A stretch of 63,991 bases of DNA, the filler included, from Octopus bimaculoides (Eukaryota), in assembly GCF_001194135.2 (NCBI RefSeq). It is 8 parts of 7 records of this genome, joined end to end, with 100 filler letters (N's around TTAATTAATTAA, not from the genome) between each part and the next. Parts side by side here need not be neighbours in the genome. Positions count along the whole stretch, not along the records: positions 39,434 to 44,366 come from NC_068988.1; 7 more parts are not named here. One strand, 5' to 3'. A program made the translations under genes and the position numbers. Below the pieces are notes generated by a model. The model was not told the origin of the DNA, made no database searches, and saw only the letters and a list, made by a program, of their open reading frames with translations. Within the stretch, counting starts at the first letter, position 1. Every line of letters starts with the position of its first letter. Below are positions 39,702-44,466 of this stretch, piece by piece.

Positions 39702-41722
39702 CAATTTCGACCGGCTACGTTGGACGCTAATCTTTCAGTTCTACTTGTCTCTTTCCTCCCTCTGACTGAAGAATATACATTGAAGCACTATCATACAATC
39801 GCTCACACATACATTAATCCAGTGAGTATGTTGTAATGAACACACTCCATTATGTTTTAGTTTGATCGTTTTTGTCAAGATTTATCGTAATATTCGATTA
39901 GTTCCCTGCAGTGCGTGTTTTCTGTATGTGTGTGTGCTCTTTATGTGTGGTTTATGTGCATGTATAATTTTCATATCGGTGACTTCAGTGAATATGAATA
40001 TTCGTCGTTTGACAATTGAAACTGGGCCATAGTCTAAGGTCATCGTCTACTTGCCTTTTCACTATGCCAGTACCAGCTCCCTATTATGCACTATCAATGA
40101 CCCCTCAAATCTGAGGTATTGAAAATGGTCAATGTTCGTGCTACGTGCCATAAAACCGAGCAGAGGCCCTTGAAATTGCGTATTCAAACTCCTAGATGTA
40201 CATAAAATAAACTAAAAGTAACCTATATATCATGTGAACCGACATAGCTTGAAAGTGAATCTTTGTGCATTGTATAACAATTTGATCTATTCATAATTAT
40301 TTCATTGTTGTCGACTGTTTTTTTTGTTTTCAACCGACAAACCTTGCACACCCAGAAAATTTCACTTTTATATTGTTGCTAAACACTTGCTAACTTCTGT
40401 GCGTGTATAATTTGAATTTTAAATTCATTGAATCGATGAAAAGCAACATATTTTATAAGTTTATTTAAGTATATCACCGTTTTTACATATCTAATTCAGT
40501 CTGGTTTACTTGTGTATTTAAGCAACGAATTATTAAACGTTTTAATTTTACGCGCCAGATAATTTTAGGGTCATATAGTGGAAAAAGACCATACATTCAA
40601 TTATATTTCATATTTGGTTTTACTGCTTTAAGAAAAATAAAATAAAATAAAAGGAAAAGATTTTCAATAAAATGTTTTGTGACATAAAGTTCTATCAGTT
40701 TTACGAAAGGGCATTTTTCAACTAATCGCTTTTGGAGCAGAAGGCATTTGAAATGTATGCGAATCAACCAGTGAGAGTGGTTTATCAGCAAATTATAACT
40801 AGATTATGTTTCAACTTAACTGCTTACCTTGAGAAATGTAAGAAGTAAGAAACGTCGTGCAATCTACGAAACATTGGTCTTGTACTACTTGACTAATGCT
40901 TCATAGAAAACGAATACGTCACCGATGTTACATATCAGATGATATTTTTTCAAGCATATTAAATTTGTGGGGGAGGAGACAAGTCGATTACATTGGTAAT
41001 TATTTTATCGAATTCGAAAGGATGGAAGGCAAAGTCGACCTCGTGTGAATTTGGAAGAAATGCCACTAATTATTCCTGAGGAAGAAGTAGAAAAGAGAGA
41101 GGAGGAAGAGGAGGATGACATAGAGGGGGACGAGGAGAAGGACGAGGAGAAGGAGGGGGCGAGGAGGAAAAGAAGATGAGTTGGGTGAAGGGTAAGTGGA
41201 GGAGAAGAATAAAAAGAAGACAGATTACGCCAGTAGCAACAACTACAACAAGAACCAGAAACAACAAAAACAAAACTCAGCGACTGTAGTTACAACAATT
41301 AAACGTAACAGCAACAGCAACAGCAACAATCAAGTGGTAACAAGTTAACTACTAAAATATAACAACTACTGGTAAGATTGTATTCATTATAAGCTGACTA
41401 AAAGTGAACATAACAAGTAAAAACAGGAAACGTTATCCCGAACCTACCGGAAGTAACTATGACGAAGCTTTTGGATCAACAATAAAGAACGAAGGTTTTT
41501 GTTTTTGTTTGGTTTATCGCTCTTTCTCTCCTCCTCTTTTTCTCCTTCCGTTTATTCTCTTTTCTCTTCCTCTTCTCCCCAACTTATTCCTCCCTCCCCT
41601 TGCTATTCTTCTTTTCATCCCCTATCATCTCCCCGTCTTCACTTTCACCTACACATCATTAATTGCCCATCCATTTCTCGTTAGTCTCTCACTATGCCCT
41701 AATCACTGTGTCTCTACCTATA

Positions 41723-42030
41723 GCCGCAGGAGTGGCTGAGTGGTAAGAAGCTTGCTTTCCAACTACATGGTCCGGGTTCAGTCGCACTTGCGTGGTAACT
41801 TGGGCACGTATCTTCTACTATAGCCTGGAGCCGACCAAAGGCTTGTGAGTGGATTTGGTAGCCGGAAACTGAAAGAAGCCCGTCGTATATGTGTGTGTGT
41901 GTGTGTGTGTGTGTCTGTATTTGTCCGCCCCCACCATCACTTGACAACCTGGGGTCGATTTGTTCGACTAAAGGCGGTGCTCCAGCATGGCCGCAGTCAA
42001 ATATCTGAAACAAATAAAAGAATGAAAGAA
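41723..42030 (+). mobile_element. SINE family A copy with internal deletion
   Basis: Head and tail match the 16947 copy; the CGATGCTGG..AAGTCC segment is missing. Confidence 0.8.
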
Positions 42031-43133
42031 CCCTGTCATATATTCGTATGTGTTTATGTCTTGAGTGTGTGTGTGTGTGTGTGTCTATATTGCATGTTTA
42101 TAAACGAATGTACTTTTTGTATATCATCTGTACAAGTAGACACCTATAGACATGGCAATTTCACTGTACTCTTTCGATATGTGTGTGTGTGTGCGTGTGT
42201 GCATACATGCGCATGGCGAACATATCGCATACATGACTATGTCAGACGTTTCTTATTTCTTTTTCAGAGAAAATTGTGAACTTATCCTGGGATTGTGTGT
42301 GCGTGCACATGTGTGTAATACTGCGTGTGTGTGTACTTGTCTGTCTATCTGTCTGTAGCACTACGCCTAACACTATACCTTTCTACAGCAGAAGGAAAAT
42401 GTTTGAAAATAATCACTGATGAAATGGTTTGTTGTCATTCAAGCTTTCTTATTTTAATGCCAAATCAAGTTAATTAAACTTAGTGTAGCCTTTGAAAGCT
42501 CTTGAATTTTCAGAGAAACACACAAATTTCATATCACAAGCAACATTTCTTCTTATCAGAAGTATCAGGCAACTTTTGGAAGCTTTAAATCCAGGTGCTG
42601 ATATGTATTCACAGGAAACAGAGGTCCTGGCAGTTACGCGGTTCTAAAAAAGGCTATTTTCATCAGCATTTTACACCTGTTTTGATTTATAAGCACTTTC
42701 TGCAATCAAATTCAACAGATCCCTAGAATAATTAATAGCAGCTTCTCTATCTATCATCACTGGCAGTTCATCGGTTGAATTTATATACAAAGTAATGTAC
42801 CTCTTAACCCTAAGACTTGCACCTTTACCTGCTGCCTATCGTGATAGAAATTTTTAGTTTTTAATGAATTAACCCTCATGTTTGTAGACTTGCAGTAGAA
42901 CCGTGTCACTGATCAGGTCGCAGGTGGTGCGGCGAAAATGTTGACACCAAATAATAACTGTTTAAGTGAAATTAACAGTTTTTGTGCGTTTTTTGAATGG
43001 CTAATACGTATCTTTCAGCCTGTAATTGCTTTAGTTTCAATACCTGATCTCAGATCAAATCACAAGTACATCGCGAATATCTATCTATCTATCCATTATC
43101 ATTCTATCTGTTTATTTATATATCTAGCTATAC

Positions 43134-43173
<40 letters not shown>

Positions 43174-43394
43174 NNNNNNNNNNNNNNNNNNNNNNNNNNN
43201 NNNNNNNNNNNNNNNNNNNNNNNNNNNNNNNNNNNNNNNNNNNNNNNNNNNNNNNNNNNNNNNNNNNNNNNNNNNNNNNNNNNNNNNNNNNNNNNNNNNN
43301 NNNNNNNNNNNNNNNNNNNNNNNNNNNNNNNNNNNNNNNNNNNNNNNNNNNNNNNNNNNNNNNNNNNNNNNNNNNNNNNNNNNNNNNNNAGTAT

Positions 43395-43481
43395 ATATTC
43401 TAAAATTGAAACGATACAAAGAAGATTAGCATGACCCCTACGCAAGGATGACACGTAAATTCGTGAAGCGTTCCATATTTT
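43395..43481 (+). pseudogene. U6: U6 snRNA pseudogene (about nt 20-106)
   Basis: ATATTCTAAAATTGAAACGATACAAAGAAGATTAGCATGACCCCTACGCAAGGATGACACGTAAATTCGTGAAGCGTTCCATATTTT is U6 with 6 substitutions relative to the vertebrate-type U6 I recall. The ACAGAGA box is mutated to ACAAAGA. The 5' end abuts a gap. Confidence 0.92.
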
Positions 43482-43749
43482 CACCTTTTGTAAACTTATA
43501 AACATCTAATTATTAAAGTGGAAAAATTATCACAAAAGGCACTTCTATTTTTCAAATACACACACACACACATATATACTGAATTCAAATTACGATGAAC
43601 GTAAACAAACAAACGAAGTCTGCTTTTAGAAGCGTTGAGATGTCTTAGAAAGTTAAAGACAATGATTTTAAATTCTCAAACGCAGGATAATGCTAATAAT
43701 ATAGACTGAACAGGATAAGCGACCCCTATTTTTCAGAAAAGGTGTTGGC

Positions 43750-43825
43750 GGCCACCTATGAGACTCGAACTCACACCTCCGCGATTACGCGCCGCGGTGC
43801 TTTAGACCGATTAAGCTAAACTGCC
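43750..43825 (-). pseudogene. tRNA-like sequence (apparent anticodon CGT; D and T arms resemble tRNA-Ile(UAU)/Met-e), left arm of palindrome
   Basis: GGCAGTT-TA-GCTT AATCGGTCTA AAGC-A-CCGCGG CGCGTAA TCGCGG-AGGT-GTGAG TTCGAGT CTCAT-AGGTGGC-C. D, anticodon and T arms pair; the acceptor is imperfect; a T4 run follows downstream. Confidence 0.7.
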
Positions 43826-43934
43826 CTCACCCCATATTCTTCTGCAAATTTAAGATGTATGGAAATCTCGCTTTATAGCGTCTCATAAAGCGAGATATCT
43901 ATATATCTTAAATTCGCAGAAGAATGCGGGAGAG

Positions 43935-44010
43935 GGAAGTTTAGCTTAATCGGTCTAGAGCACCGCGATGCGTAATCACTGGGGTGTGAGTTCGAGTCTC
44001 ATAACTGACC
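43935..44010 (+). pseudogene. tRNA-like sequence, right arm of palindrome
   Basis: GGAAGTT-TA-GCTT AATCGGTCTA GAGC-A-CCGCGA TGCGTAA TCACTG-GGGT-GTGAG TTCGAGT CTCAT-AACTGAC-C, followed by a T run at about 44019-44023 (Pol III terminator-like). Confidence 0.7.
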
Positions 44011-44056
44011 GCCAACACTTTTTCTGCAAAATAGAGGGTAGCTTATCCTGTTCAGG

Positions 44057-44101
<45 letters not shown>

Positions 44102-44466
44102 TATATATAATATCAGTATATCACTTAACTTATTAAATAAGGTAATGTAGGGGAAACAATAATATATATACTTGGATATTAACGGATATAATACAGGAGT
44201 ACGTAGATTTACATATACAAACGTAAATAGACTAACACTAATTTAGAAATATGTACATTCAAATTCTTTTGTACATACATACCAATACACAAATACTTAT
44301 GCGCATACATACCCATACAATTATATATGTATACATACATAAATTTATATATATATATATATATATNNNNNNNNNNNNNNNNNNNNNNNNNNNNNNNNNN
44401 NNNNNNNNNNTTAATTAATTAANNNNNNNNNNNNNNNNNNNNNNNNNNNNNNNNNNNNNNNNNNNN

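What the first reader, a model, noticed from the sequence alone, without database searches (positions are those of the whole stretch)
43700..44061. Palindromic element carrying two divergent tRNA-like Pol III units
Seen: ~177-bp inverted arms around an 8-nt centre. Each arm holds, outward from the centre, a TATA-like stretch (about -35), a 76-nt cloverleaf with A and B boxes, and a T4-T5 terminator, then about 35 bp of shared terminus ending in TA. Both cloverleaves share odd features: 10-nt D loop, 6-bp anticodon stem, G at position 33, anticodon CGT. Combining the arms restores a 6/7-bp acceptor (GGCAGTT/AACTGAC), so a better-folded ancestor existed. Inference: either a fold-back/MITE-like transposon whose inverted repeats contain a tRNA-like gene, or an inverted duplication of a non-canonical tRNA-like RNA gene. 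It could extrude a cruciform, and read-through host transcripts would form a long hairpin. This is not a standard SINE, since there is no body or tail and the termini are symmetric.
Basis: partly seen in the sequence, partly recalled or inferred. Interest (0 to 1): 0.8.

Follow-up and report, generated by a model that had tools for sequence, protein, structure and literature searches.

The report
Decayed palindrome of a tRNA-Thr pseudogene
A 364-bp hairpin-forming palindrome in octopus-like repeat-rich DNA consists of two mirror-image, mutationally decaying copies of an already defective threonine-tRNA gene with its flanks; this is most likely an ordinary genomic relic, and the tools here could not tell whether it is also one copy of a mobile family.

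Summary
Window 43699-44062 is a near-complete palindrome with two 177-nt arms, 87% identical, around an 8-nt centre (DNA hairpin -158 kcal/mol, z = -29). Each arm carries, reading outward, an AT-rich upstream stretch, a 76-nt tRNA-like sequence and a T4 or T5 run.

The tRNA-like units derive from tRNA-Thr(CGU), with Rfam scores of 36.6 and 28.8 bits against a threshold of 29. Both share disabling defects: G33, a 9-nt anticodon loop and a 2-71 mismatch. The duplicated unit was therefore already defective.

The arms differ as often inside the tRNA (10/76) as in the flanks (13/102). No difference is compensatory and four break stems. This is neutral decay, not a conserved RNA gene.

It is not a SINE, because the upstream flank is shared, a terminator follows the tRNA directly, and there is no body or tail.

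Best reading: an old DNA-level inverted duplication (fold-back or template switch) of a tRNA-Thr pseudogene unit, now inert. The main rival is a copy of a fold-back/MITE-like family. It could not be tested because no cephalopod genome is searchable here, and the TA-rich ends make target-site duplications unreadable. Interest is low to moderate.

The parts
43699..44062 (.). Whole palindrome (about 364 bp). The outer limit of arm homology is ATATAG...CTATAT.
43700..43876 (-). Left arm. On the minus strand, from centre to terminus: upstream flank, tRNA-like unit, T4 run, 37-nt trailer.
43877..43884 (.). 8-nt unpaired centre, AGCGTCTC
43885..44061 (+). Right arm. On the plus strand, from centre to terminus: upstream flank, tRNA-like unit, T5 run, 38-nt trailer.
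43750..43825 (-). tRNA-Thr(CGU)-derived unit, the better-preserved copy. Rfam 36.6 bits, 19 of 21 cloverleaf pairs, G33, 9-nt anticodon loop, 8 CpG.
43935..44010 (+). tRNA-Thr(CGU)-derived unit, the more decayed copy. Rfam 28.8 bits (below threshold), 17 of 21 cloverleaf pairs, two broken anticodon-stem pairs, 5 CpG. ARAGORN does not call it.
43737..43740 (-). T4 run (AAAA on the plus strand), 10 nt downstream of the left unit. Candidate Pol III terminator.
   Evidence: sequence read directly
44019..44023 (+). T5 run, 9 nt downstream of the right unit. Candidate Pol III terminator.
   Evidence: sequence read directly
43900..43906 (+). TATATAT at -35 to -29 of the right unit only. The left arm has CATACAT here.
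43843..43918 (.). Central 76-nt hairpin formed by the two upstream flanks. Its Rfam miRNA-family matches are far below threshold and reflect only a generic hairpin.

Best explanation
The locus is a relic. A complete tRNA-Thr(CGU) gene unit, with about 50 nt of 5' flank, the 76-nt tRNA-like body, a T-run terminator and about 40 nt of trailer, was copied at the DNA level in inverted orientation right next to itself. The unit already carried inactivating defects: G instead of U33, two extra nucleotides in the anticodon loop, and a 2-71 mismatch.

The copying was most plausibly fold-back priming or replication template switching. The switch back would have used TA microhomology at the adjoining (TA)n tract. 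This mechanism is inferred, not shown.

The result was a nearly perfect 2 x 177-nt palindrome with an 8-nt loop. Both arms have since drifted neutrally to 87% identity, partly by CpG decay. That level is similar to the divergence among neighbouring octopus SINE copies.

Neither copy is a working tRNA. The A and B boxes and terminators are still intact, so weak TFIIIC/Pol III occupancy and short outward transcripts remain possible. Any present-day effect would be structural: cruciform-prone DNA, or a long dsRNA hairpin if a host transcript reads through.
For: Shown:
- The palindrome and its strength.
- The tRNA origin. The anticodon loop C-G-CGT-A-A is the Thr-type C32/A37/A38 context with a single U33G change (plus general tRNA knowledge).
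- The defects are shared by both arms, so they predate the duplication.
- Homology covers the 5' flank up to the centre and the 3' trailer, so this was DNA-level copying and not retroposition.
- Divergence is uniform: tRNA 10/76, upstream 8/51, downstream 5/51, Fisher p = 1.
- There are no compensatory changes. Four changes break stems: 3-70, 28-42 and 30-40 in the right arm, 5-68 in the left. The cloverleaf energy is -14.3 against an MFE of -22.0 (left) and -4.0 against -15.8 (right).
- CpG count is 8 in the left unit and 5 in the right.
- There is no second copy in the 4.7 kb of readable sequence or in 24.8 kb of Octopus bimaculoides DNA, which holds 6 copies of the window's SINE.

From the literature: fold-back priming and template switching at short inverted repeats are established routes to inverted duplications (abstracts of PMC10622511, PMC7467729 and PMC10766183, listed).
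Against: Copy number in the host genome is unknown, so 'single local event' is an assumption.

Short, almost loop-free palindromes of MITE size (about 360 bp) with TA-rich ends are, as a base rate, more often transposon copies than one-off duplications.

Fold-back and template-switch events with arms of about 180 bp and an 8-nt loop are uncommon, and such palindromes are expected to be unstable, yet this one survived to 13% divergence.

The differences between the arms avoid the A and B boxes (0 of 23 positions; nominal p = 0.02-0.03, post hoc). This could hint at selection for Pol III promoter function, as in a transcribed or mobile element. A longest-identical-run test is not significant (p = 0.78).
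Confidence: 0.5

Rival explanations
1. The palindrome is one copy of a dispersed, non-autonomous fold-back/MITE-like DNA transposon family. Its long terminal inverted repeats are built from a captured tRNA-Thr pseudogene unit. It would be mobilised in trans by a transposase that cuts at the TA-flanked termini (Tc1/mariner-type), and the arm divergence would have accumulated since insertion.
For: - The size (about 364 bp), the lack of coding capacity, the near-full-length inverted repeat with a tiny loop, and the AT-rich termini TA|TAG(A/C)CTGAACAGG...CCTGTTCAG(G/T)CTA|TA, which are compatible with a TA duplication.
- Tc1 and Mariner elements are among the abundant DNA transposons in cephalopod genomes (PMC8967140).
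- A window sampled at random is more likely to hit a multi-copy element than a unique event.
- The A and B boxes are identical in both arms.
Against: - No second copy or fragment occurs in the piece, in 24.8 kb of O. bimaculoides, in the viral or metagenome collections, or among 5.8 billion predicted proteins through translated words. All of these have very low power. The control with a hugely abundant SINE gave only 3 protein hits.
- The termini do not match the TIR starts I know for Tc1/mariner, hAT, PIF or piggyBac (recalled from memory, not tested).
- TA or TATA at both ends is self-complementary, so it cannot be told apart from part of the palindrome or from the adjoining (TA)14 microsatellite.
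- The literature searches found no description of a MITE with tRNA genes as its TIRs.
Confidence: 0.3
2. These are two adjacent members of a locally or genome-wide amplified cluster of tRNA-Thr-like genes or pseudogenes. Cephalopods carry thousands of tRNA-derived loci. On this reading the head-to-head arrangement is one junction of a larger DNA-level amplification and not a dedicated palindrome-forming event.
For: The giant squid genome has about 17,000 tRNA-derived loci and per-isotype counts from 46 up to 2,541 (PMC6962438). A U6 pseudogene-like sequence lies 217 bp away, so small Pol III-type gene relics cluster here.
Against: There are no further copies within the readable 4.7 kb, apart from what a 216-nt assembly gap might hide. 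The two units meet with exact mirror symmetry around an 8-nt centre, which points to one fold-back event rather than to assorted duplications.
Confidence: 0.1
3. It is a functional pair of divergently transcribed non-canonical tRNA-like Pol III genes, or a TFIIIC-bound insulator-type element, maintained by selection.
For: In both arms the A box (TAGCTTAATCGG) and the B-box core (GTTCGAGTC) are intact, a T4 or T5 run follows 9-10 nt downstream, and an AT-rich element lies upstream. The differences between the arms avoid the boxes (nominal p = 0.02-0.03).
Against: - The rate of change is the same in the tRNA and the flanks (p = 1).
- Stems are broken without compensation, and the right unit falls below the Rfam threshold and is missed by ARAGORN.
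- U33 is lost and the anticodon loop has 9 nt.
- MFE folding shows no excess stability (z = -0.4 and +0.7).
- The box result is post hoc and is confounded by CpG hypermutability of the anticodon arm.
Confidence: 0.07
4. It is an assembly or library artefact, such as a chimeric fold-back read.
For: The piece comes from a gapped scaffold, with an N run at 43175-43390.
Against: Artefactual palindromes have near-identical arms. Here the arms differ at 23 of 178 columns, including 2 indels, with a CpG-decay flavour. That requires long independent evolution in a genome.
Confidence: 0.03

Closest known systems
tRNA pseudogenes / tRNA-derived loci of cephalopod genomes
   Same: The sequence is derived from tRNA-Thr(CGU). 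It has a low covariance score, lost invariant positions (U33), broken stems, and neutral divergence with CpG decay. Such loci number in the thousands in cephalopods (PMC6962438).
   Different: Here the whole gene unit, including both flanks, is present twice as an almost loop-free palindrome.
Fold-back (inverted) duplications formed by hairpin priming or replication template switching
   Same: Two inverted copies abut with only a few unpaired bases between them. The copying was at DNA level and included non-transcribed flanks. There is possible TA microhomology at the outer junction.
   Different: The described cases are mostly kilobase-to-megabase rearrangements in yeast, cancer or human CNVs. 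This one is 177 nt per arm and old. The mechanism is inferred from the architecture only.
MITEs / Foldback-type non-autonomous DNA transposons
   Same: The size, the lack of coding capacity, the hairpin-forming inverted repeats and the TA-rich ends.
   Different: Multi-copy status, target-site duplication and relation to an autonomous element are all untested or unreadable. I know of no described MITE family whose TIRs are complete tRNA gene units, and none turned up in the searches.
tRNA-derived SINEs (for example the octopus tRNA-Core/tRNA-Deu SINEs, one of which lies at 41715-41925)
   Same: A tRNA-like head with A and B boxes.
   Different: The upstream flank is shared between the copies. 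A T4 or T5 terminator follows the tRNA part directly. There is no body, no shared simple-repeat or A-rich tail and no direct repeats. There is no sequence similarity to the SINE in the same piece.

Membership tests
Functional cytoplasmic tRNA-Thr(CGU) gene | Covariance-model score clearly above threshold | tested here: inconclusive
   Rfam RF00005 scores 36.6 bits (left) and 28.8 bits (right) against a gathering score of 29. By my knowledge, genuine eukaryotic tRNAs usually score much higher. tRNAscan-SE is not available here.
Functional cytoplasmic tRNA-Thr(CGU) gene | 7-nt anticodon loop with U33 | tested here: not met
   Both copies have G at position 33. Rfam aligns a 9-nt loop.
Functional cytoplasmic tRNA-Thr(CGU) gene | Intact 7-bp acceptor stem and 5-bp anticodon stem | tested here: not met
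   The acceptor stem has 5 of 7 pairs in each copy. The right copy has 3 of 5 anticodon-stem pairs.
Functional cytoplasmic tRNA-Thr(CGU) gene | Purifying selection, seen as fewer changes than in the flanks and compensatory stem changes | tested here: not met
   10/76 differences in the tRNA against 13/102 in the flanks, p = 1. There are 0 compensatory changes and 4 stem-breaking changes.
tRNA-derived SINE | tRNA-like head with internal A and B boxes | tested here: met
   TAGCTTAATCGG and AGTTCGAGTCT are present in both arms.
tRNA-derived SINE | Copies start at the transcription start, so no upstream sequence is shared. A body and a 3' tail are present, with no internal terminator. | tested here: not met
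   About 50 nt of upstream flank is shared up to the centre. A T4 or T5 run lies 9-10 nt after the tRNA part. Only the right arm abuts a microsatellite.
MITE / Foldback transposon | Terminal inverted repeats and no coding capacity | tested here: met
MITE / Foldback transposon | Target-site duplication of defined length | tested here: inconclusive
   TA or TATA sits on both sides, but it is self-complementary and merges with the (TA)14 tract. The 8-bp flanks do not match each other.
MITE / Foldback transposon | Many dispersed copies with constant termini | not testable with these tools
   No cephalopod genome collection is available. The low-power checks were negative: the piece itself, 24.8 kb of O. 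bimaculoides, and the viral, metagenome and protein routes.
MITE / Foldback transposon | Termini related to an autonomous transposon | not testable with these tools
   No Repbase or Dfam library is on hand.
One-off fold-back / template-switch inverted duplication | Adjacent inverted copies with a very short spacer, including non-genic flanks | tested here: met
   8-nt centre, with homology from the centre to the outer ends.
One-off fold-back / template-switch inverted duplication | Unique locus, with a single-arm ancestral state in an outgroup | not testable with these tools
   No orthologous sequence is obtainable.
miRNA precursor families (mir-4679, mir-9, mir-297) | Rfam gathering score | tested here: not met
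   40.0 and 37.8 bits against 88, 34.4 against 58.6, and 38.8 against 90. These are generic hairpin or microsatellite matches.

The most novel reading that the evidence does not exclude
The palindrome is a member of an undescribed octopus fold-back/MITE-like transposon family. Its terminal inverted repeats are complete Pol III tRNA-like gene units facing outward, so that every insertion seeds two TFIIIC/Pol III sites and a cruciform or dsRNA-forming hairpin. The apparent sparing of the A and B boxes would then reflect selection on the element's Pol III promoter.
Probability: 0.25. Interest if true: 0.5.

Novelty: new member of a known kind. Interest (0 to 1): 0.25.

Why it matters
As a lone relic it matters little. 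It is one more tRNA pseudogene in a genome full of tRNA-derived repeats. It is still a tidy example of a small palindromic duplication that survived long enough to diverge by 13%, and a reminder that tRNA scanners will report such loci as Thr genes.

It would matter more if a genome-wide search showed a family. A DNA transposon that carries outward-facing Pol III units in both inverted repeats would be an unusual hybrid of MITE architecture and SINE-type promoter. It could scatter TFIIIC sites and long dsRNA hairpins, which are potential ADAR substrates in heavily editing cephalopods, through the genome.

Tried and rejected
1. Searches for other copies.
- Within the piece, a 21-mer with up to 3 mismatches and a 15-mer with up to 2 mismatches found only the two arms.
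- Two scans of viral contigs found nothing.
- The single metagenome scan gave one chance match to the degenerate pattern, with no tRNA and unrelated flanks.

2. Protein-word route. I concatenated the stop-free translations of both arms in all frames and searched them against 5.8 billion proteins. There were no hits.
- As a control, the same trick with the window's SINE gave only 3 hits, one of them an O. bimaculoides gene model. The negative result therefore has almost no power.
- That hit gave 24.8 kb of O. bimaculoides DNA (L002), which has 6 SINE copies and no arm.

3. Attempt to harvest more octopus DNA. I used a LINE-tail ORF from L002 as a query and made three contig look-ups. The contigs lack the octopus SINE and so come from other eukaryotes. 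I abandoned this route.

4. SINE reading: rejected, for the reasons in the membership test.

5. Dada-type transposons, which target tRNA and U6 genes, were considered from memory because a U6 relic lies nearby. I rejected this because the tRNA-like units are uninterrupted and mirror-imaged, not split by an insertion.

6. miRNA reading of the central hairpin: rejected, because the Rfam scores are far below threshold.

7. Assembly artefact: rejected because of the arm divergence.

8. Extension of the palindrome into the flanking (CA)n/(TA)n tracts: rejected, because those tracts are direct and not inverted.

9. Literature searches for tRNA-bearing MITEs, for the sequence motifs themselves and for octopus tRNA gene surveys returned nothing specific. 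Albertin et al. 2015 is not held in the library.

Full report
**What is there**

The readable piece (39434-44366) is AT-rich, non-coding and repeat-laden. It has microsatellites, no ORF of note and a 216-nt assembly gap at 43175-43390.

Two copies of a tRNA-derived SINE lie at 41715-41925 (+) and 39509-39625 (-). Related copies, 73-88% identical, occur six times in 24.8 kb of Octopus bimaculoides chromosome CM046624.1. The piece therefore comes from an octopus or a close relative. SINEs of tRNA origin dominate octopus repeat content (PMC8967140).

**The observation**

Positions 43699-44062 form a palindrome. The arms 43700-43876 and 43885-44061 align over 178 columns with 23 differences, so they are 87% identical, and they surround the 8-nt centre AGCGTCTC. 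As single-stranded DNA the region folds into one hairpin of -158 kcal/mol against -40 ± 4 for shuffles (z = -29). As RNA the value is -265 kcal/mol.

Each arm, read from the centre outward, holds four parts:
- about 50 nt of AT-rich flank;
- a 76-nt tRNA-like sequence;
- a T4 run (left) or T5 run (right), 9-10 nt downstream;
- a 37-38-nt trailer ending in CTATA.

Rfam's tRNA model scores the left unit (43750-43825, minus strand) at 36.6 bits and the right unit (43935-44010, plus strand) at 28.8 bits. The gathering score is 29. ARAGORN calls only the left one, as tRNA-Thr(cgt).

There is one correction. The TATATAT at -35 to -29 exists only in the right arm, where the left has CATACAT. Both arms share CTTAAATT at about -28 to -21.

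**What it derives from**

The loop C-G-C-G-U-A-A is the Thr-type context (C32, anticodon CGU, A37, A38) with a single U33-to-G change. The D arm and the T arm (GTGAG/TTCGAGT/CTCAT) are canonical (plus general tRNA knowledge). The units are therefore descendants of a tRNA-Thr(CGU) gene.

G33, the two extra loop nucleotides and the 2-71 mismatch are present in both arms. They were already in the unit that was duplicated. It was a pseudogene, or at least not a decoding tRNA, before the palindrome formed.

**How it has evolved**

Differences between the arms are spread evenly: 10 of 76 in the tRNA, 8 of 51 upstream and 5 of 51 downstream (Fisher p = 1 for tRNA against flanks).

None of the ten tRNA differences is compensatory. 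Four destroy stem pairs: 3-70, 28-42 and 30-40 in the right copy, and 5-68 in the left.

The cloverleaf retains 19 of 21 pairs in the left unit (-14.3 kcal/mol against an MFE of -22.0) and 17 of 21 in the right (-4.0 against -15.8). Neither unit folds better than its shuffles.

Six of the 23 differences lie in CpG contexts, and three of these are transitions. The right unit has lost 3 of 8 CpGs. This is the signature of neutral decay.

One weak counter-signal exists. No difference falls in the 23 A-box and B-box positions (nominal p = 0.02-0.03). This test is post hoc and is confounded by the CpG-rich anticodon arm. The longest identical run is unremarkable (p = 0.78).

**How it arose**

Homology includes the untranscribed 5' flank right up to the centre, and a terminator follows the tRNA part directly. 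The copying was therefore at the DNA level and not by retroposition, which excludes a SINE.

Exact mirror symmetry around 8 nt is what fold-back priming or replication template switching produces (abstracts of PMC10622511, PMC7467729 and PMC10766183). The copy arm ends in CTATA against a (TA)14 tract, which would offer microhomology for the switch back. That step is inference.

The 13% arm divergence is similar to the divergence among SINE copies in the same piece and in L002. This suggests an event of roughly the age of the octopus SINE expansions, which is also inference.

**The unresolved rival**

A 364-bp, non-coding, almost loop-free inverted repeat with TA-rich ends is also what a fold-back/MITE-like transposon copy looks like, and Tc1/Mariner elements are common in cephalopods.

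TA or TATA at both ends is self-complementary, so it cannot be read as a target-site duplication.

Copy number is the decisive datum and I could not obtain it:
- There is no other copy in the piece.
- Translated words searched against 5.8 billion proteins gave no hit. A control with the hugely abundant SINE gave only three hits, so that negative is nearly powerless.
- There is none in 24.8 kb of O. bimaculoides.
- Further contigs reached through a LINE ORF were not octopus.

I put the one-off duplication at about 0.5 and a mobile family at about 0.3. The remainder is split between a tRNA-pseudogene cluster junction, a selected Pol III/TFIIIC element and an artefact. The artefact is essentially excluded by the arm divergence.

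**What it does now**

It most likely does nothing as an RNA gene. The A and B boxes and the T runs are intact, and four or more T residues are the canonical Pol III stop (PMC3141230 abstract). Residual TFIIIC binding or short outward transcripts therefore cannot be excluded.

The two promoters point away from the centre, so their own transcripts would not pair with each other. Only a read-through host transcript would form the long hairpin.

The central 76-nt hairpin gives only sub-threshold, generic miRNA-model matches.

**Verdict**

This is a new member of a known kind, a tRNA pseudogene caught in a small inverted duplication. Interest is low to moderate unless a genome-wide search reveals a family.

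Noticed in passing
window 43378-43482 (+); real bases from 43391: A U6 snRNA-like sequence scores 86 bits on Rfam against a gathering score of 44. Its 5' end is lost in the assembly gap. It carries five transitions against the consensus, including ACAGAGA to ACAAAGA in the catalytic box, so it is probably a U6 pseudogene. It lies 217 bp left of the palindrome, so two Pol III-type gene relics sit side by side.
   Followed up: partly
window 41715-41925 (+) and 39509-39625 (-): Two copies of a tRNA-derived SINE lie in inverted orientation 2.2 kb apart. They are 77% complementary over 132 nt, and each ends in a microsatellite. Six related copies (73-88% identical) occur in 24.8 kb of O. bimaculoides (L002), which identifies the piece as octopus-like.
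   Followed up: yes
L002 10001-10429; protein P0001: The N-terminus of the O. bimaculoides gene model LOC106868758 (KIYIYIYIYIYIHDELLSVSVYQIHLHSFGRLEAIVEDTWPRC...) is a translated TA microsatellite plus an antisense SINE. This is either an exonised SINE or, more likely, a gene-model artefact in front of a real Myb-domain protein.
   Followed up: no
window 43175-43390: A 216-nt run of N marks an assembly gap. It hides the 5' end and promoter of the U6-like sequence, and it could hide further repeats.
   Followed up: no
window 41060-41230 and 41500-41660: A GA-rich block is followed 300-400 nt later by a TC-rich block. They are weakly complementary (28-29-nt arms, 71-72%). This is low-complexity sequence of unknown origin.
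   Followed up: partly
window 44058-44110 and 43553-43580: Compound (TA)n(CA)n(TA)n microsatellites flank the palindrome in direct orientation. The right-hand one abuts the palindrome terminus and obscures its true end.
   Followed up: partly
L003-L015: ENA assemblies (ERZ25067570 and others) and TARA Oceans scaffolds carry the same LINE C-terminal ORF as octopus (48-71% amino-acid identity) but lack the octopus SINE. The LINE lineage is therefore shared among unidentified marine eukaryotes.
   Followed up: no
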